A DNA stretch of 64,000 nucleotides from the NCBI RefSeq assembly GCF_006345805.1, contig NW_021835997.1:186001-250000 (forward strand). The letters run 5' to 3'. How positions within the stretch are numbered: position 1 is the first letter of the stretch; the number at the start of each line of letters is the position of its first letter. The translations under genes and the position numbers were made by a program. The notes under the pieces were generated by a model, which saw nothing but the letters and a program-made list of their open reading frames with translations, did no database searches and was not told the origin of the DNA. This document shows, one piece after another, positions 31,678 through 63,081 of this stretch. This stretch comes from Octopus sinensis (taxonomy: Eukaryota).

Positions 31678-31762
31678 ACATAATTCTATTGTCTCCTTGT
31701 TTCAAAAAATTTCATATTTATTATTATTGTTTTATCATTAAACGTTTCCGTTTTCTTGTCTG

Positions 31763-33135: not shown

Positions 33136-33158
33136 CACACCAACTTCAAATTGGCAAT

Positions 33159-34420: not shown

Positions 34421-34451
34421 GTCAGCTTAATAAGGTAATTAATCAAATCTT

Positions 34452-34940: not shown

Positions 34941-34950
34941 AGAGCAGAAG

Positions 34951-38063: not shown

Positions 38064-38324
38064 GGTTATATCAAAGCAGGTCGCATTTATATATCTACAT
38101 AAATTTATAGTTATTTAAGGAAACTGCGAGCGTAGCGAGCAGGGCCTCCGCAGGAGCTAGCTCGCAGTGAGCGAAGCGAACTGCTGAGCTAGTAATATAT
38201 ATAAAGACTTTAAAAAATTTATTAAATTTATTGTTAATAGAAATTTAATTTTTGAATTTTTAGAAATACAATTCTGCAGCATTTAGAGTAAAGTTAAAAA
38301 TACAATTTTTTTAGAAAATTCTGG

Positions 38325-42219: not shown

Positions 42220-42940
42220 TCAATTAACACCGAAAATCGTCAAGTCCCAGCGGCAAGGACGCAGTGTGCGTTGCCCGAACAATGGCCAGACCGATGCGCT
42301 GGCGGAACCAGAGACCCTCTCTCGTGTCCTTGAGCCTCCTCCCAATGGACTGCCCGACCTCTTTGAGGAACGAGTCAGTCTCCTTTCCAGCTGCTCCAGC
42401 GGTCTCCAGGGCGATTGCCGTAACGCAGTAGCGGTCCGCAAGCGAAGAATATTTGTGTAGTTTCATCTTTTCGGCGTGGTTTGCAGCTGAACAAGGGTTT
42501 GCGGCGGAAGAATGGATCCTCGATTTTGAAAAGGTATCCACAACGGTAACGTCACATACGAGGGCCTTCCCCGACGATTACGGGAATATTGTCATCCCGT
42601 CAGGCCTTTTGCCGTCTCCCCGATCGAGTCCGACCGGTTCGAGACCGCCCTTCACGATTTCATCGAGGGCCTTGTGTCTGTGTTCTCTGCCTGCGCTCCT
42701 CTTGCAGGAAAGTGGGTGCAGTCCCTTTTCGTCAACGTTCTCACCGCATCTGCAGCGGTGTCTTGCGCAAACATTCAGGCCGAGACGGTGAGCCACTCCG
42801 ATGCGTATGGCAGCATCGTCTAGCCGTGTCCCGATGCTGGAAAGAGGAAGAACATTCAGCCAGCTGCCAGAGTGAGGGGCGGATGCCGCACGAAGGCATG
42901 CCAGGCGGTGTTGGTCAAGGGGTTTTTTATTATCCTTGAG
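42220..42940 (-). mobile_element. CRE-clade 3' fragment
   Basis: HSGSWLNVLP..CRCG..HPLSCKRS..DGKRPDGMTIFP, then ALETAG..QRIGLAIVR after a frameshift. Confidence 0.9.
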
Positions 42941-43039
42941 CACAAATATTGCTGATGAATAATACAATGAAAATGAGCAAATGATGATTATTATTATTTA
43001 AGCCAAACAAAATCACCGTCTTAACCATTAACTAACACG

Positions 43040-43500
43040 TTCAGGTGATTCCGACACTTCTCAACAGTCGAGCCATCTTTTCACGATGTTCAGACCGTGA
43101 CCCCACACACTTTCTGTATGTACGGTGAATGGTTTGTGGTCCATTTCCACGATCCCCCCATTTGCCTCTACGAGAGACTCCAGTGTTCTATGGACAATTT
43201 CCCTATCGGTATGGTCCTTCAGTAGGTTGATAGATCTTTCTTGATTTTTTTCGATTTTTAGCCGGTTCGTTGCCGCCAGGTTACAGCCCCAATCAGCACA
43301 TGCATAGCCTATTGTTGGCTCGATACACTGCTTGTAAAGGGTCTCTACCCCTGGCGGACAAGTTCTCCCACAGTTCCAAAGAAAGGCTTTCACAAAATTA
43401 ATTTTCTTTATACAAGTTGACACGATCGATTCAACATGAGGTGAAAAACAGAGGAAACGGAAAATACAATCAGATTCTACGTGAGGAACATATGACATGG
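43040..43500 (-). mobile_element. LINE ORF2 C-terminal remnant
   Basis: FSPHVESIV..LYKQCIEPTIGYACADW..LKIEKNQ resembles the Jockey/CR1 post-RT region and ORF 4233-4499. Confidence 0.65.
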
Positions 43501-43792
43501 AAAATACAATTAAAAATTTTAAAAATAATCAATACATAAGTTTTGGGATAAATTGTGAATTTTTATGATTAATCTTAGGGAGACGAAGTGCAGTATAAAG
43601 GATATCTGCTACTTAGTCTTCCTACATAATTTTTAGTAGGTGCGACGCTAGGGGTGAGACTTACCTTCGAGATTACATCCTCAACTACCTGTCGGGTTGC
43701 CTCCTTGAACTTAGGGCGAATGGATGCACAAATTTTATTTTACGGTTGATGTGACATCTAGATAAACTTTTTTTAAAGATAAAACTTTTATT

Positions 43793-44110
43793 CTAAAAAC
43801 CAAAATCATAATAAACGAAAGAAAGAAAAAGACTAAGCTGAACTTGCCGCATGATTGATAGACAATTCCCGCGTAAGACGACCAGCGAGATCCTCTGGAT
43901 CAGAAACGTAAATTCCCTAAAATCACTGGAACGACGGATCCATAAACCGCCAATTTTATTAAGGTTAGGAAAAGTTTTGGCGCAAAAAACACAAGACGTC
44001 TCCACGGCAATAGCCCAAAAGCAGAAACAATGAACCAAATGGCTCTACTTCGAAATTTTCAAAGATTCATCCTTCTCTGCCGCCGAACCGTGTCTAAAAG
44101 CAGAAGAAAC
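43793..44110 (-). mobile_element. CRE-clade extreme 3' fragment
   Basis: AIAVETSCVF..FLIQRISLVVLRGNCLSI. Confidence 0.8.
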
Positions 44111-45049
44111 TAAGGTTCTCTTTGAGAGAGAGTCTTTCCCAAGAAAGTTGTTTCCCGGCTTCAAAAGCAAACTTCTAAATAAATAAAATTCAAAGAAATT
44201 GAAATATGACATTTTTAATCTTGTGAAGGCGATATTGTTCAAAAAAATTAATTCCGTTCAAGAGAATATAATACAGGATGTTTTACATTTTCCCAAATTA
44301 CGAAATATGTGGAAGAAATAATTTTTCGAAACTGTCAAAAATTAACTCTTCTTTAAAAGTATTTACCGACCCCTGAATGTTTTTTTCTTGTGTAAGCTTC
44401 TCGTTTTAGACATTGTCAAAATTCTTTCGAAGAAATATTGAAATAAAGACAATTCTTCTAATCAATAATTCGTCTAATATCAAATCTTATTAGACGGGCG
44501 CATAAAGTCTGTGATCAACTAATAATAATTATTATTAATTGCACATCTGCAACAACAAGAAAGAAAGTTACAATCTTCCCGTCGCTTGTGCCACACACTC
44601 CGTAATAGTTGCATCTAACTGTTCTGTTTTGAAAATGGAGTATAAGTCTTGGTTCTAGGAGTATAAGTCTTCATTGGATAGTTACGAATTTAGTCAATTG
44701 GGACCAAGCCAAAATTGGCGACTAAGAGAATTTGGCGAATAAAAGAAATAATCAATATCCTATCTTCTGTCAAAAATAATTTTCTATAACTTTTAACTAC
44801 CTATTTGAATGATTCTAAACATTTAAATAAATATCTGAAACATTTATTAAAAACCAAAATAGCCTGTAGACGAGTTGTCGCCTAACTCGCCTAAATTTAT
44901 TTGGTGACAACTCGTTTACGAAGAAAAATATTTTAAGGGTAAATAAAATAAAATTTTAAAATAATTACTTTTTATTCTGAACTTTTAAAGCAAATCAAAC
45001 CATCAATTAGCTTAAAATAGCAATCTACTTCAAATTCATGAAAATTTTA

Positions 45050-45440
45050 ACATGCTATTCTCAGTTCAAGTTCCTTTTTGCAGTCTGTCGCAGACACTTC
45101 AAGATACCTTCCTGACTTAATTTGTGTCATTATCACAAAAAGTCTGTTCTTCCCTGGCCAAAACATTGACAAAAGCTGCCAAATTTGGGTGCGCTCTGTT
45201 AAAAGAACTGTTCAACAGCTAATGCCAACCTTTTAATGAATTAGTTGTCCTAGGCACTGACTTTAATACCTGATGAAAACAACTCCAAAAACAAGATGGG
45301 TCAGCAATAAAATGTTTTTTAAAATAAATCAGAAAATTCATTATTTTTTGGTTGTTTTCTTTTCCTGTAGCATCAAGAGAAAATTTTTCAAATTCCAATA
45401 AAACATTTTCCACAGGGATGAAAGCCAAATGGTAGCATTT
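45050..45440 (-). mobile_element. MULE transposase fragment
   Basis: CYHLAFIPVENV..FLIYFKKHFI..W..PRTTNSLKGWH matches the MULE RTNNxxEGWH motif. Confidence 0.8.
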
Positions 45441-46660
45441 CCTTTCTGTCATGCTGTTTGTCTCCAAATTATCTGCCCGCTCAACATGGTGTCGGCGTTT
45501 CAAGGTTGCGAGGCTGCGGCCCATTCCTTTCGTGAACTGTCAGAATCTTCCGAGGAGTTTATCATGGTCAAACTGGACGTATATAATGCTTTTAACTCCA
45601 TCAGACGGGATCACTTACTGGAATGCTGCCGCGAAATGGCTCCTTTCGCATACCCAAGCATACTTATGTTTGACGACGTCCCTCTCGGCCATTGGCCTAT
45701 CCATTAATGCAAATAAATCTTTTTTTAATTATTAAAAATTTAAAATAATTAAAGCTTTTAATGAAAAAGCCAATTCACATACTTCATAATTTTCATCTTT
45801 AACAATAATGTATCTTTTTCGTGAATGTCTCCCCCATTCTGTCCAATCCCCTGTAAACATTTGGTACCTAGACGACGCAACTATTTGCGCTCCTCCCGAA
45901 GTTGTTTTTGACGACCTCCGGATTATCCTGCTATCCCTCTCGGCCATTGGCCTTTCTATTAACGCAAATAAATCTGAAATTGTGAATATCCACCTTCAAC
46001 AAAGTTTGTTCTCTGCCGCCGCCTCTGTTTGCCGCAATATTCTTCCAGACGTTCGTATTACCGAAAAGTCTAATTTATCCACGCTAAGATGTGCACCCTG
46101 TTTCCACAGAAGTGACCTCCTATCTGATTTGGATTATATCCTTACGCTCGGTATGAGCTCCCTATGCAATCTTGCTTTTGACGATTCTGGCTGGTCTCAG
46201 GCGACCTTACCTGTGCGCTGAGGCGGCCTTGGTCTAAGATCCTGTTCCGATTTGGCTTTTCCGGCTTATCTGTCCTCTCATTCTGCCTCCCGCACTCTCT
46301 TAGACATCGTTCTCCGAAACCATCTTGACTGCAGATTTTGCCGCGACAGGTCTCTTATGGAAGGCCCGGTTTTACTCGAGGCGGCCTGAGTCTGAGCACT
46401 ACCAGCGCCAGTGGGACGAGATTGTATGTCGTTCTTTGTACGAAGAACTCACCCCGAAACTTCACCAACACAGCCGCCGTTGAGACCTCTGGGGTCTTTG
46501 GCCGAGTGTCGCTTTGTTTCCTACGCTGTTTGGGGAGAAGAATCGCCAAAAGGAGGGACGACCAGAGAGAGTCCTTTTGGCTTCTTCAACGTCTCTCTAT
46601 TGCCGTAATCCGCGGCAACTGTTTCGCAATCCGTGAGGCTGGGAGGGCTCCCTGAACTGC
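45440..46660 (+). mobile_element. CRE-clade element, rearranged and internally deleted
   Basis: GCEAAAH..VKLDVYNAFNSIRRD, NIWYLDDAT..IGLSINANKSE, ATLPVR, AVETSG..QRLSIAVIRGN. An AT-rich insert lies at 45720-45830. Confidence 0.85.
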
Positions 46661-46859
46661 GTAGACTTAATTAAAATTATTTTATTTTTGACGAAATATG
46701 AGATTAATCCCATTAAAAAATGAGTAAACAAAGTTGGGTACGAGTGTCCGAAAAAGATACATTATTGTTAAAGATGACAATCAAAAAATTCATTTAAAAT
46801 TATGAAGTATATGAATTGGCTTTTTCATTAAATGCTTTAATTATTTTAAATTTTAACGT

Positions 46860-47240
46860 ATCTCTGGGGACTTGGTCTTCGTCCTGCTTGCAACCGAGCC
46901 TCGTGAATCAAGCCTGTAAGCTAGCTTCAGAGCATAGCGCCGGGTTTATTTGCATTTTCTGTTAATTTTCCCAAGATCTTTGGAGTAGAACCACGCTTCC
47001 ATCACGCACAGCAAGCAGCTGGGACGGTCAATTTCAGCTAGAGGCCCAGGACTCTGATCTGGTGACTTTTTGGTGTTAATTTGCAGATAAGCGGATTTGT
47101 CTATTGCTAGCGAGAGCCGCTTATTGGTGCACCGCTCCTTTATCACTTCAATGTAGGTGGCAAGTTTTTTTTCTGAAATCTTTGCGCCCTTTGAGGTGTC
47201 TAGGATGAGGACGTCATCTGGTATATTGAACAAGTCATTA
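46860..47240 (-). mobile_element. Jockey-like RT thumb fragment
   Basis: DDVLILDTSKG..RLSLAIDKS, similar to the YADDILVLDSS..GLTLSREKS region of ORF 4610-5605. Confidence 0.65.
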
Positions 47241-47690
47241 AATTTACTTATAAAGAAATAGTAAAAACAGTAAATTAAATATTTTATTAAATAATCTCGA
47301 AAAATCAGCGTTAAAAATAGGTTTAAACTCGTTTATTTTGCAGCAAGATAATGCTTTTTAAGAGTCAGTCGGCCTCTCCCAAACTTAAATTACAGGAAAG
47401 TTTTTGTATCTTAAATATTGTGTAGTTAGTTTTGAATATATTTGGTTTCTGAAACTCGTTTCTGAAATAAATTGTTATAAACTAAAAAAAATATATATTT
47501 GGTTTATATTGTAATATTTTAATTATAATTTATTTCTAAATATATAATAAAATAAATGTCACATGTATTTCGTGCTTAGCTGTACTTTCTTATGTGCCCA
47601 AATTTATTAATTTGGTCAATCCGGAAAGTGACATAGTATCGCTAATTAATGGATCATACCGTACATTTTAATAGTACAAAATTCTCTGAT

Positions 47691-47738
47691 GTGATGAAAT
47701 GATAGGGACAAATGATTAATGATTACCTATTGTTCTGA
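47691..47738 (+). ncRNA. Candidate box C/D snoRNA (SNORD74/snR64-like guide)
   Basis: C box GTGATGA 47691-47697, guide GATAGGGACA 47701-47710, D' ATGA 47712-47715, C' ATGATTA 47719-47725, D CTGA 47735-47738. The guide is complementary to conserved LSU rRNA UGUCCCUAUC. Confidence 0.6.
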
Positions 47739-49128
47739 TCAACTTTAGTCATTTGAGAGACTATTTTTAGCATACTTTATTAATATATTCAAATCTATCG
47801 ATTCGAGAGCCAATTTTACAAAAAATTAATATTCTTAATATTAGTTTAAATTTGGAATAGTATTATTTTTCAATAAATTTGATTATTTTTTGTCGTATAC
47901 CTCTAAGTTGTATTAGATTATCAATTAATGAGAAAATTAGAATTTGTACATGTAATTGTGAATCTAACAAAAAAATAAGTGACTATCTAAATATGACTCA
48001 ATAAGTCAAAATACTTTGTCAATGGAGAAAATCCTGATGTATTGAAAAAATCTCGTGGTGGAGATTATTCTTCTAAATTTAATAATTTACACAAGCAATG
48101 ATTTAATATTGAATATAAGAAAATAATTTTAAAATTGATAAAGACCCTCTCAAATTTACCAAATTGTCGAATTCAAAATTTTCGTAATTCACATGATATT
48201 TGCGTGATCATCTATATCTACATTTTCCTGAGAAGCACAAGTTGTATTCACCTTTAGAGATCTAAAAGCTTCTGAAAGATTTACTCTTTTTTCATTAGAT
48301 TCCTCTTCAAAAATTGTTTCCTATGTCTAATTATAAATAAAATCACCAACCGATTCAACTTTTTTGACTGTAATGTATCAGCTTGTTCAGATTTTTTTGA
48401 ATTGCATTAGCTCTTCATTTCTATTATATACACAATCAACATATTCACTATAAATTATTGGATCGTCAATTTAAAATGTCTTAATTATTTTTTATATAGC
48501 AACCCACTGCTTGATATAAATTTTTCATCATTTTTTCAAAATTCAAGAGGTTTTGAAATTAACATCGAATCTCATAGAATTGATCTACGTAATTCCATTA
48601 AGTCAATCCATATTATCGCTTTAACAGTTTCATTAAATTTGAGTTTTGGAATTGTTGTTATGTTTAAATTTTTTGATATTTGTCACATTTAAACGTTCTA
48701 TTTTATTTAAGATCTTCAGAGAAATTTTCTCTTTACTCGTGAAGAAAAAGAAAAAAATCTTGGAAAATTGAGAAGCAGAAACAAATGGGTCACCTAAATA
48801 TAGCATAGTATAGAAATTTTTTGTTGCTAAAAAGTTTAACACAATCCGTCACAATTACAATGATGCGTGTAATAAATATTTTAAAATTTTGATTAATTTG
48901 AAGAGAGGATTTTGAATAATCCATCGAAATAATTAAAAGAAGCTGAATCGAAAAGCGACGGATTTAAGAAATTGCAGTATATTTGTCTTTTATTTCTAAG
49001 AATAAATAAAACATCGTGTGCGTAATTTAATCATTAGAGTTTGTTTTTTATGATTATTATTTGTACAATCAATTAATGTCCTCTTTTTTTATCTAGATGC
49101 GGATTGATAAATAATTAAAATACCACAT

Positions 49129-50936
49129 TTGTGTCATTTAAACATATCATTTCACAATAATAAGAAATGTGGAATAAAAAGTAAAAATAATTTATTTAAA
49201 TTTAGAAAAAAATGGAGTACGAACGATCTGATCGTAGATAAAAAGCTACACAGAACAAGTATCTTGCAAAATATTTTGTACTTTGCAAAAAACGAAATTT
49301 TTTATGACAAGCTTATCGGTCCACAACAACTGTGGGAAGGTCACCGAGAAAGCATGTGTGAAGATATATTAAGAGAGAAGAATAGATTGAGTTTCGATGC
49401 AGAGATTTTCAACATTGGATTAATCATGATAGATAGATTGCTAATATCTATCGTTGGTAAGAGTGTAGGTGAATTTGGTTTTATAATCAGCGATATTCAT
49501 AATATTAATTCATTTGATGAGCATTATAATTTAGAAGAACTTCGAACAATAGTGGAAGAAAGAGAACAAAGCTTAACCACTGGCCAGTTGGAGGTATACA
49601 GAGAAATTAATCGAGTCATCCAAGAAGAAAACGGTTCTATCATTTTTATTGATGCACCGGGTGGAACAGGTAAGACCTATCTTCTAAATCTATTATTAGC
49701 TAAGGTCAGAAGCGAAAATAAACTAGCTTTAGCAGTTGCATCTTCTGGAATTGCTGCAACTCTTTTAGATGGCGGTCGAACCGCACATTCGACATTCAAC
49801 ATTCCGTTGAATCTCTCATATACTACTGAATCGGTTTGTAATGTAAAAAAAATTCAACTACGGGTAATAGAATTATGCATTCTAGGTTAATTGTTTGGGA
49901 TGAATGTACGATGGCTCATAAAGGCGCATTCGAAGCAGTTGATCGAACATATAGAGATATCAAGAATTGTAGCGACCATTTATTTGGGGGAGCAATAGTT
50001 GTATTGGCAGGTGATTTTAGACAGACGCTGCCAATTATTCAAAGAGGGACGCCTGCGGATGAATTGAATGCCTGCCTCAAATCGTCATATTTGTGGACAC
50101 ACGTGAAAAAGGTAAGCTTAGATGTAAATGTACGTGCACATTTACAAGGCGTTAATAGCATATTCCCACAAATCCTTCTAGATATTGGAAATGGGGCAAT
50201 CACTTCAGAAATGCAAGACCAGAAAATTAGGCTACCGGAAGAATTATGTATTTTCGTAGAAACAGCAGAAGAATTATTGAATGCCGTCTATTCCGAACTA
50301 TCTGAACACTACGTGAATTTCGACTGGCTGCGTGAACGAGCTATATTAGCTCCACTTAATGATGAGGTACTTAATATAAATTTAGATTTATTAATGAAAA
50401 TCCCTGGCAGAGAAAGAATATATAAATCGGTCGACGTTATTATGGACCATGAAAGGGCCTGCGAATATCCTGTAGAATTTTTAAATTCCTTAGATCCATC
50501 TGGAATGCCGAATCATCTATTGAAATTAAAAATAGGTGTACCGGTTGTGTTACTCCGCAATCTAGCGCCACCTAAATTATGCAATGGTACAAGGTTGGTT
50601 ATCAAGAATTTGATGGCTAACGTAATAGAAGCGACAATATTAACAGGTAATTACAGAGGTGAGGATGTTTATATCCCACGAATACCTCTGATTTCGGAAG
50701 AATTACCTTTTAGATTTAAGAGACTACAATTTCCGCTGAAGATAAGTTTTGCTATGACAATAAACAAGGCCCAGGGACAGTCTTTAAAGGTAGTAGGCTT
50801 ATTTTTAGAGAACGAGTGCTTTTCACATGGCCAGCTGTATGTGGGGTGCTCAAGGGTAGGTAGAAGAGAAAATTTATTTATATTTGCCAAGGATGGACGG
50901 ACTGCAAACATCGTTTATCCACAGGCCTTAGAATAA
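49129..50936 (+). CDS. Chimeric kinase-5'/Helitron helicase ORF created by the duplication junction (frameshift at A8 49845-49852)
   Basis: ..[10 protein letters not shown]|[20 protein letters not shown] in one frame, followed by the 353-aa helicase ORF identical to 37002-38063. Confidence 0.75.
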
Positions 50937-53900
50937 GGTTATATCAAAGCAGGTCGCATTTATATATCTACATAAATTTATAGTTATTTAAGGAAACTGC
51001 GAGCGTAGCGAGCAGGGCCTCCGCAGGAGCTAGCTCGCAGTGAGCGAAGCGAACTGCTGAGCTAGTAATATATATAAAGACTTTAAAAAATTTATTAAAT
51101 TTATTGTTAATAGAAATTTAATTTTTGAATTTTTAGAAATACAATTCTGCAGCATTTAGAGTAAAGTTAAAAATACAATTTTTTAGAAAATTCTGGGTTC
51201 ACCGATTTCTGATAAGGGAATTGCGAAGGCTATCGTTTCACAACGAGATAAGATTGCTCCTCTCTGCGACCGATTACGACTGTTTGGCTCCCATCTGGGG
51301 CTGTTTTTGCTGAAAAACTTTCTTTTTATCCCCCGTTTAACATTTTTGCTCCAAACGTCTCCTTGTTTTCGCTCACGTCAAGAACTTTTGGATTTGGATG
51401 ACGCGGTTACATCATCATTACAGTTACTACTGAACACTTTGTTCACTGACGTGGGACGTACACGTGCCGCACTTCCACTCCGCTTTGGTGGCCTTGGGGT
51501 TCGTTCTTGTGCAGATCTTGCTTTGCCTTGTTATCTCTCGTCGATGTCTGCTTCCGGCAATTTCGTTCGCTCTGTTCTTATCAACTCACTCGAACTTGAT
51601 GAGCTTACGGAATACCCTGTTGCTGTTCTCGCCTGGAGATCGCTCGGACTTGGCCTTCCGGAGATTCCTTCAATACAGAAGAGTTGGGATGTCATCTGGT
51701 GCACACACCTGTTGGAGAGTCTTCGCACGCGAGTCGACCAGTTGGAACTGGCTTCTTTGAACTGTGCCTGTCAGCCTCACTCAGGAGACTGGCTAAACGC
51801 ACTTCCGTTGGCGTCCAATGGTCTGCTTATGGAAGACGAAACTATACGTATCGGAGTGTGTCTTCGACTTGGACTTGAAATCTGCCAACCTCACCGTTGT
51901 CGCTGTGGTTTTTTGATTCCTTCGAACGGTTTACACGCATTGTCCTGTAGGAGGAGTGCTGGCCGATTTCCCCGCCACGTCCTCCTCAATGAAGTGGTGA
52001 AAAGGGCTTTGGATTCTGCGGGATTCCCATCGACCCTTGAACCTATTGGGCTCTGCCGCAGTGACGGAAAGCGTCCTGACGGGATGACTATATTCCCCTT
52101 TAGAGGAGGAAGGTCTCTTGTTTGGGATGTAACTTGCGTCGACTCCTTTTCAGATACTGTGCTCACAGGAACAGCCAGTACACCAGGCTACGCATGTGCG
52201 CTGGCAGAAGAAAGGAAGTTGACGAAGTACGCTGTGCTTCCGAACGTCGTTGAGTTTGTCCCCCTAGCCTTTGAGACCTCCGGTGTGGTTGGAAAGAAGG
52301 TAGAAAATCTGTTACGGGTTGTGGGAGGAAGAATCTCACAGAATACAAATGACCGGAGGGAGACGAGCTGGCTTTTCCAGCGCATCTCGGTTGCAATTCT
52401 TCGCGGGAACTGCCTCTCTATCCGCAGTGCTTCGTCGTCGGACTAACCCTCAAGTTCACGACATTAATTCTCTATTAATTAATTTGACTGTAAAAAAAGT
52501 TTATTAATAAAAAAAAAAAAAAAAAAAATTAAAAAAATAATTGAACAAGCATGACACATGGGAAAATAAAATAAGATTAAATGATGAAGATAAAAAGATT
52601 AAATAATACAGATGGAAAAATAAAAAAGTAATGGTGAAGGATTAAATAGTAAAAATGAAAAGATATAAATGATGAAGGTGATAAAAAAGATTAAATTATC
52701 GTCGAAATAAAACCAATTCAATTACAGATTATCCTATATTATAAGAACTTCTGTAAATCAACAATATATTTAATCAATTTTAAACAGAAAATAAAAATTC
52801 ATAAACAAAAATATCCACAACAACCAAATGAATTATGAGTAGCAACGTGGTTTTCCAAAATAAAATTAATTATAGTAAAACGAATATTTTATTATAATAT
52901 AATTAAAATTATTAATTTTTGAATTTATATATTCTGGATCATCTTCACGGACGGCGCTTAGATTGCTTGAGAGACTTGCATAACTCCAAAGTTTCTTGTT
53001 ATTTTAAGATAGTTTGACTATCCAAATAGTATGAATATTTCAAAAATATCTATGCAATCAGTCCCTCTGATGGGACACGTCCTGAGGTTAGACCCGACAT
53101 CCTGATTTCTAGAATACATTACAGTCTTGCCAAAACGTCCGGGAAGACTTCTTGCCAAAAGACTGGAATAGTAATGGCTGTGGAGAAGGACTATTACTTG
53201 GAGTGTTTTCTCATATCGTCGGCCAATATTCCACATAGTCCATATTTGTGAGAAACCTCCGCCAACTCACTCCTTTCTGCTGGTATGAAAGAAGACTTTC
53301 CTCAGTATAGGCAAAGTCTCTGCGTTTAAAGACACCCAAAGTGACAGTGGATACATTTTATGGGCAGTATATACTCAAGAAGTATTCAACCACTACAGAA
53401 ATGAGATTTCATGGAGGACACAACTTGTTTCGCTCCTTAAAATGTAGAATGAGAACCATCTCCTCCCATATGAATATAATCTACCCCGATGAGAGTCCCC
53501 CTCAGTCATCTGTTGATGTGTATTTTCTAATAAATAAACGTTTCTTTGTGCAAAAAAATATAAGTAGACCCAATAATTTCAGAATTGGAAATCAACATTG
53601 CCTGTGATATATTTGCATTTTTTAAAAATAAGATTTCCGTGCTTAAGTATGTTTAGTTCTGTCAGTTTGTAAAGTTTTCACGTTGATCTTAGAATGTAAA
53701 AAATATCATTAAATTTATATATTACTGTTTTTCATAGCGACTTGACCGGGTTGTTCAGATTGTCGAGGAGTAGTCTCCCTCACTTGTCCTTCACTCCACT
53801 CTCTACCGAATAGGCAGCCTGAAAATGGAATAGTCCGCTCAGTTTGGAGAAGCACTTTTCTCACATGTAAAACGTGGTCTCCCAATGAGGACAAGACGGG

Positions 53901-56900
53901 CAGGATCAGCACTAGCTTGTACATAACCAGGAAGAGAGATTCACAAATATTTGCCAGTTTAGTCACGTGCTTACGAAATTTGCACTCAACCACCCCCAGA
54001 AGTAAACAGCAGTCATTAAAAACCTCAAAAAACGAACGAAATAGTTTCCCGCGTATATATGTTTTTGTCAAAATATTGATAAAAAGTGCACACAAGTGCC
54101 GAATCAGACCATCTGTGTGAACAAGGGATTGTTTTAGGAGAGAATATTTTTAGCTGAATTTTCTAAAATATTCTTACTGTGCTCTTAAATATTTTTTATT
54201 TTTGTTTTTGTTATCAAAATTTTTTTAATAGTTCAAATAACTATAATAAAATTTTACGTAATATTTTACTATTTATTATAACGTGGCGCATGTTTTTGCT
54301 TTTAACATTTTGTAAATATTAATTCATATTATTATTTATATTATTTCAAATGAATGCATATTAATATTTGCTCAGGACTTTCAATTGTTTATAATTGTTA
54401 GTTCCGAGTTCTGAATTTATCTTATCAATATTATAATATGCAATAATTGTTTATTTCATGATTTAATTTTGTTTTTTGAATTTTTTCACTAAAATCAGTT
54501 GAATAGATACTGGATTTGTCATTTTTGTAGTTTTATTTTTTGAATTGAGTTATTGATTTAATCTGAATACTATTACGTGATCAATATTTATTGAATAACC
54601 AATCAATGCTATCAAAGGCACAAAATAAAGTGTAAAAGAGGCACTTAAATATTTTATCAAAAACAGCAGTATACTGAAAAGCTCAATATGCACCGTAAAG
54701 AGTGTGATAAAGAATTGAAAGCTCTTGAGGTTTATATCATTTTAATGCGAACTTTGCATTCCCTAGGTCTTTGACATTTATTATTTTTTTGCAATTGTTT
54801 AATCAGGAATTAAAATTATAATGTTCGTTTTCTTGGGACTTATTCTTTTTTACGTTTTTCTTTCTTTCAAAATTTTCTTTGAGTTGACTGGACTATAAAA
54901 GGAATGTCGCTGAACTGATTATTAATATCTATCAGCAGTTTAGTAAAATCTCGGTGGTTGGGGGGATGACCTCTGATATAGTTTACTATTTTCGTGACCA
55001 AACTAATGGTATTTTTGATTTTTATTATCTTTTTTTTTCAACCAAAAATTTTTGTTACAAAATGTATTATTAATCGTTAATTTTTTTTATCAATTAACAC
55101 CGAAAATCGTCAAGTCCCAGCGGCAAGGACGCAGTGTGCGTTGCCCGAACAATGGCCAGACCGATGCGCTGGCGGAACCAGAGACCCTCTCTCGTGTCCT
55201 TGAGCCTCCTCCCAATGGACTGCCCGACCTCTTTGAGGAACGAGTCAGTCTCCTTTCCAGCTGCTCCAGCGGTCTCCAGGGCGATTGCCGTAACGCAGTA
55301 GCGGTCCGCAAGCGAAGAATATTTGTGTAGTTTCATCTTTTCGGCGTGGTTTGCAGCTGAACAAGGGTTTGCGGCGGAAGAATGGATCCTCGATTTTGAA
55401 AAGGTATCCACAACGGTAACGTCACATACGAGGGCCTTCCCCGACGATTACGGGAATATTGTCATCCCGTCAGGCCTTTTGCCGTCTCCCCGATCGAGTC
55501 CGACCGGTTCGAGACCGCCCTTCACGATTTCATCGAGGGCCTTGTGTCTGTGTTCTCTGCCTGCGCTCCTCTTGCAGGAAAGTGGGTGCAGTCCCTTTTC
55601 GTCAACGTTCTCACCGCATCTGCAGCGGTGTCTTGCGCAAACATTCAGGCCGAGACGGTGAGCCACTCCGATGCGTATGGCAGCATCGTCTAGCCGTGTC
55701 CCGATGCTGGAAAGAGGAAGAACATTCAGCCAGCTGCCAGAGTGAGGGGCGGATGCCGCACGAAGGCATGCCAGGCGGTGTTGGTCAAGGGGTTTTTTAT
55801 TATCCTTGAGCACAAATATTGCTGATGAATAATACAATGAAAATGAGCAAATGATGATTATTATTATTTAAGCCAAACAAAATCACCGTCTTAACCATTA
55901 ACTAACACGTTCAGGTGATTCCGACACTTCTCAACAGTCGAGCCATCTTTTCACGATGTTCAGACCGTGACCCCACACACTTTCTGTATGTACGGTGAAT
56001 GGTTTGTGGTCCATTTCCACGATCCCCCCATTTGCCTCTACGAGAGACTCCAGTGTTCTATGGACAATTTCCCTATCGGTATGGTCCTTCAGTAGGTTGA
56101 TAGATCTTTCTTGATTTTTTTCGATTTTTAGCCGGTTCGTTGCCGCCAGGTTACAGCCCCAATCAGCACATGCATAGCCTATTGTTGGCTCGATACACTG
56201 CTTGTAAAGGGTCTCTACCCCTGGCGGACAAGTTCTCCCACAGTTCCAAAGAAAGGCTTTCACAAAATTAATTTTCTTTATACAAGTTGACACGATCGAT
56301 TCAACATGAGGTGAAAAACAGAGGAAACGGAAAATACAATCAGATTCTACGTGAGGAACATATGACATGGAAAATACAATTAAAAATTTTAAAAATAATC
56401 AATACATAAGTTTTGGGATAAATTGTGAATTTTTATGATTAATCTTAGGGAGACGAAGTGCAGTATAAAGGATATCTGCTACTTAGTCTTCCTACATAAT
56501 TTTTAGTAGGTGCGACGCTAGGGGTGAGACTTACCTTCGAGATTACATCCTCAACTACCTGTCGGGTTGCCTCCTTGAACTTAGGGCGAATGGATGCACA
56601 AATTTTATTTTACGGTTGATGTGACATCTAGATAAACTTTTTTTAAAGATAAAACTTTTATTCTAAAAACCAAAATCATAATAAACGAAAGAAAGAAAAA
56701 GACTAAGCTGAACTTGCCGCATGATTGATAGACAATTCCCGCGTAAGACGACCAGCGAGATCCTCTGGATCAGAAACGTAAATTCCCTAAAATCACTGGA
56801 ACGACGGATCCATAAACCGCCAATTTTATTAAGGTTAGGAAAAGTTTTGGCGCAAAAAACACAAGACGTCTCCACGGCAATAGCCCAAAAGCAGAAACAA

Positions 56901-59900
56901 TGAACCAAATGGCTCTACTTCGAAATTTTCAAAGATTCATCCTTCTCTGCCGCCGAACCGTGTCTAAAAGCAGAAGAAACTAAGGTTCTCTTTGAGAGAG
57001 AGTCTTTCCCAAGAAAGTTGTTTCCCGGCTTCAAAAGCAAACTTCTAAATAAATAAAATTCAAAGAAATTGAAATATGACATTTTTAATCTTGTGAAGGC
57101 GATATTGTTCAAAAAAATTAATTCCGTTCAAGAGAATATAATACAGGATGTTTTACATTTTCCCAAATTACGAAATATGTGGAAGAAATAATTTTTCGAA
57201 ACTGTCAAAAATTAACTCTTCTTTAAAAGTATTTACCGACCCCTGAATGTTTTTTTCTTGTGTAAGCTTCTCGTTTTAGACATTGTCAAAATTCTTTCGA
57301 AGAAATATTGAAATAAAGACAATTCTTCTAATCAATAATTCGTCTAATATCAAATCTTATTAGACGGGCGCATAAAGTCTGTGATCAACTAATAATAATT
57401 ATTATTAATTGCACATCTGCAACAACAAGAAAGAAAGTTACAATCTTCCCGTCGCTTGTGCCACACACTCCGTAATAGTTGCATCTAACTGTTCTGTTTT
57501 GAAAATGGAGTATAAGTCTTGGTTCTAGGAGTATAAGTCTTCATTGGATAGTTACGAATTTAGTCAATTGGGACCAAGCCAAAATTGGCGACTAAGAGAA
57601 TTTGGCGAATAAAAGAAATAATCAATATCCTATCTTCTGTCAAAAATAATTTTCTATAACTTTTAACTACCTATTTGAATGATTCTAAACATTTAAATAA
57701 ATATCTGAAACATTTATTAAAAACCAAAATAGCCTGTAGACGAGTTGTCGCCTAACTCGCCTAAATTTATTTGGTGACAACTCGTTTACGAAGAAAAATA
57801 TTTTAAGGGTAAATAAAATAAAATTTTAAAATAATTACTTTTTATTCTGAACTTTTAAAGCAAATCAAACCATCAATTAGCTTAAAATAGCAATCTACTT
57901 CAAATTCATGAAAATTTTAACATGCTATTCTCAGTTCAAGTTCCTTTTTGCAGTCTGTCGCAGACACTTCAAGATACCTTCCTGACTTAATTTGTGTCAT
58001 TATCACAAAAAGTCTGTTCTTCCCTGGCCAAAACATTGACAAAAGCTGCCAAATTTGGGTGCGCTCTGTTAAAAGAACTGTTCAACAGCTAATGCCAACC
58101 TTTTAATGAATTAGTTGTCCTAGGCACTGACTTTAATACCTGATGAAAACAACTCCAAAAACAAGATGGGTCAGCAATAAAATGTTTTTTAAAATAAATC
58201 AGAAAATTCATTATTTTTTGGTTGTTTTCTTTTCCTGTAGCATCAAGAGAAAATTTTTCAAATTCCAATAAAACATTTTCCACAGGGATGAAAGCCAAAT
58301 GGTAGCATTTCCTTTCTGTCATGCTGTTTGTCTCCAAATTATCTGCCCGCTCAACATGGTGTCGGCGTTTCAAGGTTGCGAGGCTGCGGCCCATTCCTTT
58401 CGTGAACTGTCAGAATCTTCCGAGGAGTTTATCATGGTCAAACTGGACGTATATAATGCTTTTAACTCCATCAGACGGGATCACTTACTGGAATGCTGCC
58501 GCGAAATGGCTCCTTTCGCATACCCAAGCATACTTATGTTTGACGACGTCCCTCTCGGCCATTGGCCTATCCATTAATGCAAATAAATCTTTTTTTAATT
58601 ATTAAAAATTTAAAATAATTAAAGCTTTTAATGAAAAAGCCAATTCACATACTTCATAATTTTCATCTTTAACAATAATGTATCTTTTTCGTGAATGTCT
58701 CCCCCATTCTGTCCAATCCCCTGTAAACATTTGGTACCTAGACGACGCAACTATTTGCGCTCCTCCCGAAGTTGTTTTTGACGACCTCCGGATTATCCTG
58801 CTATCCCTCTCGGCCATTGGCCTTTCTATTAACGCAAATAAATCTGAAATTGTGAATATCCACCTTCAACAAAGTTTGTTCTCTGCCGCCGCCTCTGTTT
58901 GCCGCAATATTCTTCCAGACGTTCGTATTACCGAAAAGTCTAATTTATCCACGCTAAGATGTGCACCCTGTTTCCACAGAAGTGACCTCCTATCTGATTT
59001 GGATTATATCCTTACGCTCGGTATGAGCTCCCTATGCAATCTTGCTTTTGACGATTCTGGCTGGTCTCAGGCGACCTTACCTGTGCGCTGAGGCGGCCTT
59101 GGTCTAAGATCCTGTTCCGATTTGGCTTTTCCGGCTTATCTGTCCTCTCATTCTGCCTCCCGCACTCTCTTAGACATCGTTCTCCGAAACCATCTTGACT
59201 GCAGATTTTGCCGCGACAGGTCTCTTATGGAAGGCCCGGTTTTACTCGAGGCGGCCTGAGTCTGAGCACTACCAGCGCCAGTGGGACGAGATTGTATGTC
59301 GTTCTTTGTACGAAGAACTCACCCCGAAACTTCACCAACACAGCCGCCGTTGAGACCTCTGGGGTCTTTGGCCGAGTGTCGCTTTGTTTCCTACGCTGTT
59401 TGGGGAGAAGAATCGCCAAAAGGAGGGACGACCAGAGAGAGTCCTTTTGGCTTCTTCAACGTCTCTCTATTGCCGTAATCCGCGGCAACTGTTTCGCAAT
59501 CCGTGAGGCTGGGAGGGCTCCCTGAACTGCGTAGACTTAATTAAAATTATTTTATTTTTGACGAAATATGAGATTAATCCCATTAAAAAATGAGTAAACA
59601 AAGTTGGGTACGAGTGTCCGAAAAAGATACATTATTGTTAAAGATGACAATCAAAAAATTCATTTAAAATTATGAAGTATATGAATTGGCTTTTTCATTA
59701 AATGCTTTAATTATTTTAAATTTTAACGTATCTCTGGGGACTTGGTCTTCGTCCTGCTTGCAACCGAGCCTCGTGAATCAAGCCTGTAAGCTAGCTTCAG
59801 AGCATAGCGCCGGGTTTATTTGCATTTTCTGTTAATTTTCCCAAGATCTTTGGAGTAGAACCACGCTTCCATCACGCACAGCAAGCAGCTGGGACGGTCA

Positions 59901-62190
59901 ATTTCAGCTAGAGGCCCAGGACTCTGATCTGGTGACTTTTTGGTGTTAATTTGCAGATAAGCGGATTTGTCTATTGCTAGCGAGAGCCGCTTATTGGTGC
60001 ACCGCTCCTTTATCACTTCAATGTAGGTGGCAAGTTTTTTTTCTGAAATCTTTGCGCCCTTTGAGGTGTCTAGGATGAGGACGTCATCTGGTATATTGAA
60101 CAAGTCATTAAATTTACTTATAAAGAAATAGTAAAAACAGTAAATTAAATATTTTATTAAATAATCTCGAAAAATCAGCGTTAAAAATAGGTTTAAACTC
60201 GTTTATTTTGCAGCAAGATAATGCTTTTTAAGAGTCAGTCGGCCTCTCCCAAACTTAAATTACAGGAAAGTTTTTGTATCTTAAATATTGTGTAGTTAGT
60301 TTTGAATATATTTGGTTTCTGAAACTCGTTTCTGAAATAAATTGTTATAAACTAAAAAAAATATATATTTGGTTTATATTGTAATATTTTAATTATAATT
60401 TATTTCTAAATATATAATAAAATAAATGTCACATGTATTTCGTGCTTAGCTGTACTTTCTTATGTGCCCAAATTTATTAATTTGGTCAATCCGGAAAGTG
60501 ACATAGTATCGCTAATTAATGGATCATACCGTACATTTTAATAGTACAAAATTCTCTGATGTGATGAAATGATAGGGACAAATGATTAATGATTACCTAT
60601 TGTTCTGATCAACTTTAGTCATTTGAGAGACTATTTTTAGCATACTTTATTAATATATTCAAATCTATCGATTCGAGAGCCAATTTTACAAAAAATTAAT
60701 ATTCTTAATATTAGTTTAAATTTGGAATAGTATTATTTTTCAATAAATTTGATTATTTTTTGTCGTATACCTCTAAGTTGTATTAGATTATCAATTAATG
60801 AGAAAATTAGAATTTGTACATGTAATTGTGAATCTAACAAAAAAATAAGTGACTATCTAAATATGACTCAATAAGTCAAAATACTTTGTCAATGGAGAAA
60901 ATCCTGATGTATTGAAAAAATCTCGTGGTGGAGATTATTCTTCTAAATTTAATAATTTACACAAGCAATGATTTAATATTGAATATAAGAAAATAATTTT
61001 AAAATTGATAAAGACCCTCTCAAATTTACCAAATTGTCGAATTCAAAATTTTCGTAATTCACATGATATTTGCGTGATCATCTATATCTACATTTTCCTG
61101 AGAAGCACAAGTTGTATTCACCTTTAGAGATCTAAAAGCTTCTGAAAGATTTACTCTTTTTTCATTAGATTCCTCTTCAAAAATTGTTTCCTATGTCTAA
61201 TTATAAATAAAATCACCAACCGATTCAACTTTTTTGACTGTAATGTATCAGCTTGTTCAGATTTTTTTGAATTGCATTAGCTCTTCATTTCTATTATATA
61301 CACAATCAACATATTCACTATAAATTATTGGATCGTCAATTTAAAATGTCTTAATTATTTTTTATATAGCAACCCACTGCTTGATATAAATTTTTCATCA
61401 TTTTTTCAAAATTCAAGAGGTTTTGAAATTAACATCGAATCTCATAGAATTGATCTACGTAATTCCATTAAGTCAATCCATATTATCGCTTTAACAGTTT
61501 CATTAAATTTGAGTTTTGGAATTGTTGTTATGTTTAAATTTTTTGATATTTGTCACATTTAAACGTTCTATTTTATTTAAGATCTTCAGAGAAATTTTCT
61601 CTTTACTCGTGAAGAAAAAGAAAAAAATCTTGGAAAATTGAGAAGCAGAAACAAATGGGTCACCTAAATATAGCATAGTATAGAAATTTTTTGTTGCTAA
61701 AAAGTTTAACACAATCCGTCACAATTACAATGATGCGTGTAATAAATATTTTAAAATTTTGATTAATTTGAAGAGAGGATTTTGAATAATCCATCGAAAT
61801 AATTAAAAGAAGCTGAATCGAAAAGCGACGGATTTAAGAAATTGCAGTATATTTGTCTTTTATTTCTAAGAATAAATAAAACATCGTGTGCGTAATTTAA
61901 TCATTAGAGTTTGTTTTTTATGATTATTATTTGTACAATCAATTAATGTCCTCTTTTTTTATCTAGATGCGGATTGATAAATAATTAAAATACCACATTT
62001 GTGTCATTTAAACATATCATTTCACAATAATAAGAAATGTGGAATAAAAAGTAAAAATAATTTATTTAAATTTAGAAAAAAATGGAGTACGAACGATCTG
62101 ATCGTAGATAAAAAGCTACACAGAACAAGTATCTTGCAAAATATTTTGTACTTTGCAAAAAACGAAATTTTTTATGACAAGCTTATCGGT
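49321..62190. repeat. Copy 2 of the tandem duplication
   Basis: Repeats the Helitron 3' half (CTAG 51062-51065), CRE copies (about 51197-52530, 55090-55810, 56663-56980, 58310-59530) and the LINE and MULE fragments. It then continues into the intact kinase at 62191. Confidence 0.97.
60561..60608 (+). ncRNA. Duplicate of the candidate box C/D snoRNA
   Basis: Identical to 47691-47738. Confidence 0.6.
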
Positions 62191-63071
62191 GAAGGAAAAT
62201 ATGGAAAAGTATATTTGGTTTTTATTAATCGTAATCTTATTTTTATAGGGAAAGATTCTCAAAACAAATGAAATAGTCGCAATCAAAGAAGTAAAATGGC
62301 TGAAAGACGATTTGACTTCTTCATCCATTAAAGAGGTTAAATATTTTAAATAACCCAAAAGGTCTCAATTTGGAATAAATTACGACATCCAAATATTTTG
62401 CTGTTTTTTGGCATAATTAAAGATCTGGAACATATTTCGATGGTGATTGGTTTTCATTTGTTTTTATTCTACAGAATATGCCAGTGGAGGATCGTTGGAA
62501 CAATTGTTACTAAATTCAACTATAAACATTACGTTAAAACGTAAGATCGATATATCAGTCGATATCGCATGTGGAATGGTTTGTACTAATATGTAATCTA
62601 TTCGTTAGAAGTATTTGAACAATCAAAATATTATGCACAGAGATCTGAAATCGGATAATTGTCTGATTAAAAAAGTACAATTAGTACATTAAAATATGTA
62701 AAGAACGGAGTTGTGGTTGTTGCTGATTTTGGACTGTCCAAAACGTTTTATGAAAATATTTACGAATCTTCACAAGGTCGAAATTCAGTCGTGGGAAGTG
62801 TATTCTATATGGCTCCAGAAATACTAAATGGGATGGAATACAATTATAAAGCTGATGTTTATTCATTTGGGATTATTCTATGTGAGGTATCAATAAACCA
62901 TGTTGAAATTTTTTAGCTAATTAATAGAGTTGGCAGCGACCCTGACGTTCTTCCAAGAAATGAAAATTTTTTAGTCAACGTTGATATTTTTAGAAATGTA
63001 TATAAACAAGCATATCCTTCCGTGTTACTTGACCTTGTAGAATTTTGTTGTGCATATGAAAATTCCAAAAA
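62070..63071 (+). CDS. TESK/LIMK-family protein kinase with 29-32-nt introns (start codon and last exon not resolved)
   Basis: IGEGKYGKVYL|GKILKTNEIVAIKE..|..LRHPNILLFFG..EYASGGSLEQLL..ACGM|KYL..MHRDLKSDNCLIKK|NGVVVVADFGLSK..VVGSVFYMAPE..KADVYSFGIILCE|LINRVGSDPDVLPRNENF. The DPDxLPR motif is typical of TESK/LIMK. Confidence 0.9.
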
Positions 63072-63081
63072 GTAGTTTATA

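What the first reader, a model, noticed from the sequence alone, without database searches (positions are those of the whole stretch)
49129..51065. Tandem-duplication junction builds an in-frame kinase-5'/Pif1-helicase chimera that lacks the Helitron nuclease
Seen: the 12.87-kb duplication starts inside the Helitron ORF (36448) and ends in the kinase Gly-rich loop (62190). At the junction the kinase coding sequence (..YDKLIG) continues in frame into Helitron PQQLWEGH.., Walker A and the whole helicase. HUH motifs 1-3 (about 35120-35790) lie outside the duplicated unit. Known: Helitron helicases are Pif1-family (SF1B). Inference: the duplicated kinase promoter and 5' exons could express a nuclease-free Pif1 helicase, i.e. 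a newborn TE-derived gene, while the intact kinase survives in copy 2. The A8 frameshift would have to be an assembly error or be bypassed.
Basis: partly seen in the sequence, partly recalled or inferred. Interest (0 to 1): 0.75.

Follow-up and report, generated by a model that had tools for sequence, protein, structure and literature searches.

The report
Tandem duplication fuses kinase start to Helitron helicase
A 12.9-kb stretch of transposon-rich DNA, most likely from a dicyemid parasite of octopus, is assembled twice in a row, and the joint fuses the first 43 codons of a kinase gene in frame to the helicase half of a damaged Helitron transposon; the fused frame is broken by a one-base loss, and nothing shows it is a working gene.

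Summary
Window 36447-49319 and 49320-62190 are a direct tandem repeat (12,873 and 12,871 nt, 99.88% identical) with a 1-nt microhomology. The left breakpoint lies in a Helitron RepHel ORF, downstream of its HUH and tyrosine motifs. The right breakpoint lies in the glycine loop of a LIMK/TESK-like kinase. The joint is in frame.

- The contiguous frame has no ATG before the joint. A start exists only under an inferred model: ATG 49167 plus a 25-nt intron of the same type as the kinase's six other 25-31-nt introns.
- The parent Helitron (33041-38192) is an internal-deletion derivative of a ~10.35-kb element and lacks about 810 N-terminal codons.
- The A8 run breaks the helicase frame in both copies, so the assembled product is 233 aa with only helicase motifs I and Ia. 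Sister copies on Octopus sinensis contigs carry A9 twice (open frame) and A8 once. A9 is therefore ancestral, and A8 is either a real deletion or a homopolymer under-call. I lean towards real (about 0.7).
- No data independent of this assembly confirm the joint, any transcript, or selection.

Verdict: an ordinary, very young or polymorphic chimeric ORF made by tandem duplication, probably non-functional.

The parts
33041..38192 (+). Parent Helitron, an internal-deletion derivative. 5' end A|TCTTAATAATAAAATGG, 3' end ..GAGCTAG|T.
   Evidence: Homology with three other copies (L001-L003) starts and stops exactly at these points, and the flanks differ. Relative to the ~10.35-kb copy L002 4331-14683, about 5.7 kb (L002 ~5748-11438) is missing.
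33158..33769 (+). 95-nt tandem array (6.5 copies) in the Helitron 5' region
   Evidence: The array is also present in L001, L002 and L003.
34942..37017 (+). RepHel ORF, first frame, in the parent copy. It holds the HUH motif (35338-35358), the Y motif (35752-35784) and Walker A (36787-36804).
   Evidence: Pfam Helitron_like_N 8.8e-47, matching profile positions 48-191 only, and PIF1 1.9e-26. Motif coordinates.
36447..49319 (+). Tandem duplication, copy 1 (12,873 nt)
49320..62190 (+). Tandem duplication, copy 2 (12,871 nt)
36972..36979 (+). A8 run that shifts the helicase frame, parent copy
   Evidence: Sister copies carry A9 (L002, L003) or A8 (L001).
49167..49180 (+). Inferred kinase exon 1 (ATGTGGAATAAAAA) in the duplicated kinase 5' end
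   Evidence: This is the only single-intron model whose short AT-rich intron resembles the six kinase introns. Inferred, not shown.
49181..49205 (+). Inferred 25-nt intron (GTAAAAATAATTTATTTAAATTTAG)
   Evidence: The six kinase introns it resembles are also listed.
49206..49890 (+). Rest of the chimeric ORF. Kinase exon 2 runs to ..KLIG (49319/49320), then Helitron PQQLWEGH.., Walker A (49660-49677), and the stop at 49888-49890. Together with exon 1 this gives 233 aa.
49845..49852 (+). A8 run, copy 2. Formally an A_AAA_AAA slippery heptamer.
49842..50936 (+). Helicase remainder in the -1 frame: motif II VWDECTM (49893-49913), motif III, the 2B domain, and motifs V and VI
   Evidence: Pfam PIF1 9.8e-31 and Pif1_2B 6.9e-18. 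Helraiser 7lcc residues 1011-1461, E=7e-86.
50996..51065 (+). Helitron 3' subterminal hairpin and CTAG terminus, copy 2 (copy 1: 38123-38192)
   Evidence: fold z=-1.97, modest
40894..41440 (.). Divergent patch: 11 substitutions and 1 indel against 53765-54310, about 2% in a repeat that is otherwise identical
   Evidence: The minus-strand ORF is open in copy 2 (53715-54149) and has two stops in copy 1.
62037..63075 (+). Complete LIMK/TESK-like kinase gene. Inferred intron 1 at 62051-62075. Further introns at 62218-62248, 62336-62361, 62450-62474, 62579-62608, 62675-62703 and 62887-62916.
   Evidence: best hits TESK2-like, 36-41% identity; LIMK1 3s95, E=1.6e-48
63082..64000 (+). Left end and transposase ORF of a Tc1-like element, starting after a TA that lies 4 nt past the kinase stop
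   Evidence: (HTH_Tnp_Tc3_2)

Best explanation
This is a real and very recent, or still polymorphic, 12.87-kb tandem segmental duplication in transposon-rich DNA of a dicyemid. It arose by non-homologous or microhomology-mediated joining (1 shared base), not by Helitron transposition. One breakpoint fell inside the helicase-linker region of an already defective Helitron. The other fell in exon 2 of a LIMK/TESK-like kinase. Both genes are on the same strand, and the joint happens to be in frame. The duplicated kinase upstream region can plausibly drive a transcript into the Helitron fragment. As assembled, that transcript encodes only 43 kinase residues plus 190 Helitron residues (helicase motifs I and Ia) before a stop. 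The chimera is therefore an incidental by-product, most likely a pseudogene at birth, while the complete kinase persists after copy 2.
For: Shown:
- The repeat, its boundaries, the 1-nt microhomology and the absence of filler bases.
- The in-frame joint and the stop at 49888-49890.
- A8 in both copies.
- Helitron termini at 33041 and 38192, defined from four copies. The breakpoint at 36447 is internal and unrelated to either terminus.
- The parent element lacks about 5.7 kb, including about 810 codons.
- 7 non-synonymous against 2 synonymous differences to sister copy L001.
- The kinase splices cleanly and keeps VAIK, HRD, DFG and APE.

Inferred:
- The start codon at 49167 with a 25-nt intron.
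- That the kinase promoter is included, because about 11 kb upstream is duplicated.
- That the duplication is real. Two stretches 99.88% identical would be merged, not duplicated, by an overlap-based merger. They also differ far less than the 1.24% heterozygosity reported for D. japonicum (PMC6736024), which argues against two haplotypes laid end to end.

Precedent: chimeric genes from tandem duplications that ignore gene boundaries are common, with 76 found in 15 D. yakuba lines, and loss is their usual fate (PMC5460883).
Against: - No reads or second assembly could be consulted, so the joint rests on a single assembly.
- The left breakpoint lies in a multi-copy repeat (other copies are more than 99.6% identical), which is where assemblers tend to err.
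- The 2% patch at 40894-41440 is not explained by a simple young duplication.
- Two of three sister Helitron copies carry A9, and homopolymer lengths disagree between the two tandem copies at 3 of 56 runs of 6 nt or more. The A8 could therefore be an under-call, and the fused ORF could really be open for about 580 codons.
Confidence: 0.55

Rival explanations
1. Assembly artefact. The locus is single-copy, and the second unit was created by assembly merging, gap closure or a chimeric long read.
For: - One breakpoint lies in a young multi-copy Helitron.
- The two units differ only in homopolymer lengths and in one 550-nt patch inside another repeat-like ORF. This is the pattern expected if one read set polished both units.
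- The published D. japonicum assembly merged Platanus and Falcon assemblies of pooled, heterozygous animals (PMC6736024). It is not known whether the window comes from that assembly.
- No independent sequence holds the joint.
Against: - The right breakpoint is in unique kinase sequence.
- The joint is clean, with no N and no filler.
- A 12.9-kb overlap at 99.9% identity would normally be collapsed rather than laid in tandem.
- Haplotypes at 1.24% heterozygosity would differ at about 160 sites, not 12.
Confidence: 0.2
2. The true sequence is A9, or the A8 is bypassed by slippage, and the duplicated kinase promoter expresses a protein of about 580 residues: 43 kinase residues fused to a complete, nuclease-free Helitron Pif1-type helicase. 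That would be a newborn TE-derived gene.
For: - One added A gives ..[26 protein letters not shown].., which aligns without a gap to Helitron helicases.
- L002 and L003 carry A9.
- Apart from the run, the helicase part differs from L002 by one residue, and motifs I to VI are intact.
- The A8 is the only homopolymer of 7 nt or more in the ORF, so it is the likeliest place for an under-call.
- In the zero frame it reads A_AAA_AAA, a formal -1 slippery site whose product is the restored sequence.
Against: - Both tandem copies show A8. Two independent under-calls are unlikely at the roughly 3-5% per-run discordance seen here.
- A 9-nt run is also a mutational hot spot, and this copy has had time to fix 2 private substitutions.
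- The RNA downstream of the run has no significant structure (z=-1.35).
- Splice models that skip the shift need introns of 38-119 nt and delete conserved residues.
- There is no evidence of transcription, and intactness is explained by the youth of the family (99.6-99.9% identity among copies).
- Rep-less Pif1-like ORFs are usually just broken Helitron transposases (PMC8788227).
Confidence: 0.15
3. An older duplication whose copies were homogenised by gene conversion or unequal exchange. The 40894-41440 patch would be the only unconverted remnant. A variant of this: the patch was converted from a paralogous repeat elsewhere in the genome.
For: The substitutions are extremely clustered (P about 4e-9), and the patch lies in a repeat-like ORF that is open in copy 2 and has two stops in copy 1.
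Against: It needs almost complete homogenisation over 12.3 kb. No paralogue of the patch is present in the window or in L001. A mix of haplotypes in the consensus explains the patch equally well.
Confidence: 0.08
4. Helitron-mediated capture or 3' transduction produced the kinase-Helitron arrangement.
For: Helitrons do capture flanking sequence when the 3' terminator hairpin is bypassed (PMC4778049).
Against: Copy 2 begins at an internal ORF position (36447), not at the 5' TC terminus (33041). The repeat also carries 11 kb of non-Helitron DNA downstream of an intact CTAG terminus, and neither breakpoint has a terminal signal.
Confidence: 0.02

Closest known systems
[quoted passage not shown]
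   Same: A direct tandem repeat with its two breakpoints in two different same-strand transcription units. The joint couples the 5' end and promoter of the downstream gene to the 3' part of the upstream one, and one intact parent is retained.
   Different: Here the 3' partner is a defective transposon ORF, not a host gene. The frame is broken 190 codons after the joint. No population, read or expression data exist.
Helitron RepHel transposase, represented by Helraiser (PDB 7lcc, PMC4778049)
   Same: The fragment matches the Pif1-type SF1B helicase domain with its 2B domain (Helraiser residues 1011-1461, E=7e-86). The parent element has HUH and two-tyrosine motifs, 5'-TC and CTAG-3' termini, A|T insertion sites and a subterminal hairpin.
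   Different: The chimera has no Rep domain. The parent lacks about 810 N-terminal codons. The helicase frame is shifted at an A8 run.
Rep-less 'Pif1-like' ORFs derived from broken Helitrons (PMC8788227)
   Same: A helicase-only ORF whose nearest relatives are RepHel proteins.
   Different: Here the loss of Rep comes from a duplication breakpoint that also supplies a foreign 5' end, rather than from simple decay.
LIMK/TESK (LISK) kinases of the TKL group
   Same: The donor of the 5' end has a complete catalytic core. Its best solved relative is LIMK1 (3s95, E=1.6e-48), and its best database hits are TESK2-like (36-41% identity).
   Different: It has no LIM or PDZ domains and only about 30 residues before the kinase domain. 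It ends at Pfam profile position 245 of 258, next to a Tc1-like insertion.

Membership tests
Helitron (rolling-circle transposon) | Rep/HUH nuclease domain with HUH and two-tyrosine motifs | tested here: met
   Met for the parent element only: Helitron_like_N 8.8e-47, HIHILVW and [11 protein letters not shown]. The domain is N-terminally cut (profile positions 48-191). It is absent from the chimera, because it lies upstream of 36447.
Helitron (rolling-circle transposon) | Pif1-family SF1B helicase fused C-terminal to Rep | tested here: met
   PIF1 and Pif1_2B domains, Helraiser E=7e-86, and 52-57% identity over 99-100% of the query to many RepHel proteins. The frame is interrupted at the A8 run.
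Helitron (rolling-circle transposon) | 5'-TC ... CTRR-3' termini, insertion between A and T, no target duplication, 3' subterminal hairpin | tested here: met
   The boundaries of homology among four copies give A|TCTTAAT.. and ..GAGCTAG|T. In L003 the base before TC is T rather than A. A hairpin is predicted, with a modest z of -1.97.
Chimeric gene born by tandem duplication | Direct tandem repeat with breakpoints in two same-strand genes and an in-frame joint | tested here: met
Chimeric gene born by tandem duplication | The 5' parent supplies a start codon and promoter | tested here: inconclusive
   There is no ATG in the contiguous frame. ATG 49167 with a 25-nt intron is a plausible model. 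The promoter was not testable, but about 11 kb upstream is duplicated.
Chimeric gene born by tandem duplication | The reading frame stays open through the acquired domain | tested here: not met
   As assembled, the frame stops at 49888-49890 after motifs I and Ia. It would be met if the run were A9.
Chimeric gene born by tandem duplication | The joint is confirmed by reads, and a transcript crosses it | not testable with these tools
There were no exact or near matches in the protein and contig collections.
Domesticated transposase-derived gene | Purifying selection, and orthologues at the same locus in related species | tested here: not met
   The ORF shows 7 non-synonymous against 2 synonymous differences to a sister copy (small numbers). 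The chimera is at most as old as a 99.88%-identical repeat. No orthologous locus was found.
Programmed -1 frameshift or transcriptional slippage site | Slippery heptamer in the zero frame, a downstream stimulatory structure, and conservation of the shift among relatives | tested here: not met
   The heptamer A_AAA_AAA is present. The downstream fold is not significant. Sister copies (A9) and other Helitrons have one continuous frame.
LIMK/TESK-like TKL protein kinase (5' donor) | Complete catalytic core (Gly loop, VAIK, HRD, DFG, APE) with nearest relatives in this family | tested here: met
   The last ~13 Pfam profile positions are missing.

The most novel reading that the evidence does not exclude
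The genome really carries the duplication and an A9 run, or the A8 is read through by -1 slippage. In that case a dicyemid expresses, from a duplicated kinase promoter, a protein of about 580 residues consisting of a short kinase leader and a complete Helitron Pif1-type helicase without its HUH nuclease. This would be a transposon helicase caught at the moment it became a host-driven gene, in one of the most reduced animal genomes.
Probability: 0.1. Interest if true: 0.55.

Novelty: new member of a known kind. Interest (0 to 1): 0.25.

Why it matters
If the joint is real, this is a cleanly resolved example of how one tandem duplication can put a transposon domain under a host promoter. That is a known route to new genes, and most such products are lost. 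It would matter more only if the helicase frame proves open and transcribed.

The by-products may be more useful in practice:
- A very young Helitron family, apparently recently mobile, with ~10-kb long-ORF copies and deletion derivatives, in a genome with 24-31-nt introns.
- Evidence that several RefSeq 'Octopus sinensis' proteins on unplaced contigs probably belong to its dicyemid parasite.

Tried and rejected
No paralogue census or second view of the locus was therefore possible.
- Exact look-ups found nothing for the junction ORF (three alternative starts), the 178-aa and 353-aa helicase ORFs and the parent ORF.
- A homology search with the junction ORF found no protein above 58% identity and none covering the kinase leader.
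- The junction 30-mer and the A-run context (A6 to A10 allowed) had no match in genome contigs or metagenome contigs.
- Splicing past the frameshift was rejected. The only frame-restoring GT..AG models are 38-119 nt long and delete conserved residues.
- A downstream frameshift-stimulating RNA structure was not found (z=-1.35).
- Helitron transduction as the cause of the repeat was rejected on the breakpoint positions.
- My early reading that the A8 was inherited by descent because L001 shares it was dropped. L002 and L003, which are closer to or as close to the window copy, carry A9.
- Pfam gave no hit for the other ORFs of the repeat unit: 38315-39574, 40875-41249, 53715-54149, 43061-43528, 42578-42997 and 45790-46221.
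Full report
**What is in the sequence**

A self-comparison of the window finds one long direct repeat. Copy 1 is 36447-49319 and copy 2 is 49320-62190, lying head to tail, at 99.88% identity over 12.87 kb. A base-by-base alignment gives units of 12,873 and 12,871 nt. One T is shared at the three boundary positions (36447, 49320, 62190), and nothing is inserted at the joint.

The copies differ by 12 substitutions and by three one-base differences in homopolymer runs (a T7 run, an A21 run and a T6 run in copy 1, each one base shorter in copy 2). All of these lie between 38306 and 41440, and 11 of the 12 substitutions lie in 40894-41440. The chance that all 12 substitutions fall within so short a span (1.78 kb) is about 4e-9. 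The remaining ~11 kb is identical.

**The two genes that were cut**

*Left breakpoint.* It lies in a Helitron RepHel ORF. The first frame (34942-37017) carries Helitron_like_N (8.8e-47) and the start of PIF1. The second frame (36969-38063) carries the rest of PIF1 and the 2B domain.

*Right breakpoint.* It lies in a protein-kinase gene, after ..YDKLIG, the first glycine of the GxGxxG loop. Downstream of 62190 the kinase can be spliced through six GT..AG introns of 25-31 nt into one frame ending at 63073-63075. It scores PK_Tyr_Ser-Thr 3.5e-52 and keeps VAIK, HRD, DFG and APE. Its nearest relatives are TESK2-like proteins (36-41% identity) and LIMK1 among solved structures (E=1.6e-48).

**The joint**

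The stop-to-stop ORF 49111-49890 crosses the joint in frame (..[10 protein letters not shown]|[11 protein letters not shown]..) and runs on through Walker A. Two qualifications apply.

- *No ATG before the joint.* That frame has no ATG upstream of the joint. An enumeration of single-intron models finds one that resembles the kinase's six other introns: ATG at 49167, a 14-nt exon, a 25-nt intron GTAAAAATAATTTATTTAAATTTAG (49181-49205), then exon 2. It gives [43 protein letters not shown] before the joint. This is inferred, not shown.
- *The A8 frameshift.* The run at 49845-49852 shifts the frame, so the assembled product is 233 residues with helicase motifs I and Ia only. Motifs II to VI follow in the -1 frame (49842-50936).

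An in-frame joint has a prior of 1 in 3, so it is not evidence of anything by itself.

**What organism this is**

The six 25-31-nt kinase introns and a 24-nt intron in a VPS13-like gene (22260-22283) are below the usual animal minimum. Among animals such introns are reported only in myxozoans and in Dicyema japonicum (PMC13644364).

The Helitron protein is 98% identical to a RefSeq 'Octopus sinensis' protein on an unplaced 61.6-kb contig. O. sinensis is the host from which D. japonicum was sequenced. That genome has 36.7% GC, 49% repeats and 38-bp mean introns (PMC6736024), which fits this window: 26-48% GC in 2-kb windows, mostly in the 30s, and dense in retroelement and DNA-transposon ORFs.

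I therefore take the window, and those octopus contigs, to be dicyemid DNA. This is an inference. No marker gene was available.

**The Helitron family**

Three further copies were fetched from the O. sinensis assembly GCA_006345805.1: L001, L002 and L003. They are 99.6-99.9% identical to the window copy over 34949-38193.

- *Termini.* Homology ends exactly at ..GAGCTAG|T, and the flanks differ. Upstream it begins at A|TCTTAATAATAAAATGG (in L003 the preceding base is T). These are the classical Helitron termini.
- *Long-ORF copy.* L002 is ~10.35 kb (4331-14683), with a 1846-codon stop-to-stop ORF.
- *Window copy.* The window element (33041-38192) has the same 5' region with its 95-nt tandem array, but lacks L002 ~5748-11438. 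That removes about 810 N-terminal codons, and an A-rich low-complexity stretch sits in their place.
- *Short derivative.* L003 also holds a short derivative that joins the 5' region to the last 220 nt.

The parent of the chimera was therefore already a non-autonomous deletion derivative.

**The frameshift**

Adding one A gives ..[28 protein letters not shown]... This aligns to six Helitron proteins without any gap. The read-through protein matches most full-length RepHel proteins at 52-57% identity over 99-100% of its length. L002 and L003 have A9, while L001 has A8. A9 is therefore ancestral, and the window's A8 is a one-base loss.

*For a real loss:*
- Both tandem copies have A8.
- The copy carries two private substitutions (35067 and 36958), so it has had time to mutate.
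- A 9-nt run is a mutational hot spot.

*For an assembly error:*
- It is the only run of 7 nt or more in the ORF.
- The two tandem copies disagree at 3 of 56 runs of 6 nt or more.
- Each octopus-contig copy has its own small deletions in short runs.

I put a real loss at about 0.7, but only reads can settle it.

Neither bypass route is convincing. Frame-restoring splice models need introns of 38-119 nt and delete conserved residues. The run is formally an A_AAA_AAA slippery site, but the downstream RNA is not unusually structured (z=-1.35), and relatives have one continuous frame.

**Selection**

Against L001 the ORF shows 7 non-synonymous and 2 synonymous differences. This is what neutral decay gives. 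The numbers are small.

**How the repeat arose**

The left breakpoint is internal to the Helitron. The repeat carries 11 kb of non-Helitron DNA beyond an intact 3' terminus, and neither breakpoint has a terminal signal. Rolling-circle transposition or 3' transduction (PMC4778049) therefore does not explain it. One base of microhomology and no filler fit end joining or template switching.

**Is it real?**

I could not test this. Neither the junction ORF nor the junction 30-mer exists in any collection I could query.

- *For reality:* the joint is clean, with unique sequence on its right-breakpoint side. Two stretches 99.9% identical would normally be collapsed, not doubled. They are far more alike than haplotypes at the reported 1.24% heterozygosity.
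- *Against:* one breakpoint is in a multi-copy repeat, and the 2% patch is unexplained.

The patch lies in a minus-strand ORF that resembles a hAT-type transposase (from memory; no Pfam hit). That ORF is open in copy 2 and has two stops in copy 1. This fits conversion from, or consensus contamination by, a paralogous repeat.

**Comparison with what is known**

Tandem duplications that ignore gene boundaries routinely make chimeric genes, with 76 found in 15 D. yakuba lines, and loss is their usual fate (PMC5460883). Rep-less Pif1-like ORFs are usually broken Helitron transposases (PMC8788227). This case is one more instance of both, with a neat anatomy.

**Verdict**

The most likely reading (0.55) is a real, very young duplication whose chimeric ORF is an incidental and probably dead by-product. 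An assembly artefact has about 0.2. The interest score is 0.25.

Noticed in passing
L001, L002, L003 (Octopus sinensis GCA_006345805.1 contigs VCDQ01009840.1, VCDQ01010000.1, VCDQ01012037.1): RefSeq 'Octopus sinensis' proteins XP_029655167.1, XP_029657626.1 and XP_029657486.1 are encoded by Helitron copies 99.6-99.9% identical to the one in this tiny-intron genome. The same 90% cluster also holds XP_029655456.1 and XP_029656728.1. All five lie on 60-290 kb contigs of that assembly. These contigs are probably dicyemid parasite DNA in the octopus assembly.
   Followed up: partly
L002 4331-14683; L003 14644-16702: The Helitron family is very young. L002 is a ~10.35-kb copy with a 1846-codon stop-to-stop ORF and A9, though it has a one-base difference near the C-terminus. 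L003 holds a short non-autonomous derivative that joins the 5' region to the last 220 nt. This suggests recent mobility in a highly reduced animal genome.
   Followed up: partly
window 63076-64000: A Tc1-like element starts only 4 nt after the kinase stop codon (TA|CAGTACCGCTCAAATGTTTCGGACC.., with internal repeats of the ATGTTTCGGACC type and a transposase ORF from 63372). The kinase ends at Pfam profile position 245 of 258, so the insertion may have removed its last helix or landed in a last tiny intron.
   Followed up: partly
window 40894-41440 vs 53765-54310: Eleven substitutions are clustered in 547 nt of an otherwise identical 12.9-kb repeat. A minus-strand ORF with no Pfam hit, which looks like a hAT-type transposase from memory, is open in copy 2 (53715-54149) and has two stops in copy 1.
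   Followed up: partly
window 21675-22709: A fragment of a VPS13-like gene (weak VPS13_M hits, 3e-07) has a 24-nt intron at 22260-22283. This is a second gene with an ultra-short intron.
   Followed up: partly
window 33064-34940: The 5' region of the Helitron is built of repeats: a (TGTC)n array, a 95-nt array of 6.5 copies, 102-nt and 118-nt duplications, and 15- and 30-nt arrays. They are followed by about 300 nt of A-rich low complexity at the deletion scar.
   Followed up: partly
window 914-8555 (-), 12482-12892 (-), 26692-27264 (+), 29412-32853 (+), 38315-39574 (+): Most of the window is transposon debris: reverse-transcriptase- and endonuclease-like ORFs typical of non-LTR elements, integrase-like ORFs, and three copies of a conserved cysteine-rich C-terminal ORF with no Pfam match (..CRCG..GLH.LSCRRS.GRFPRH..). 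These assignments are by eye; only 38315-39574 was scanned against Pfam. L001 1-781 matches window 6678-7451 at 97.7%.
   Followed up: no
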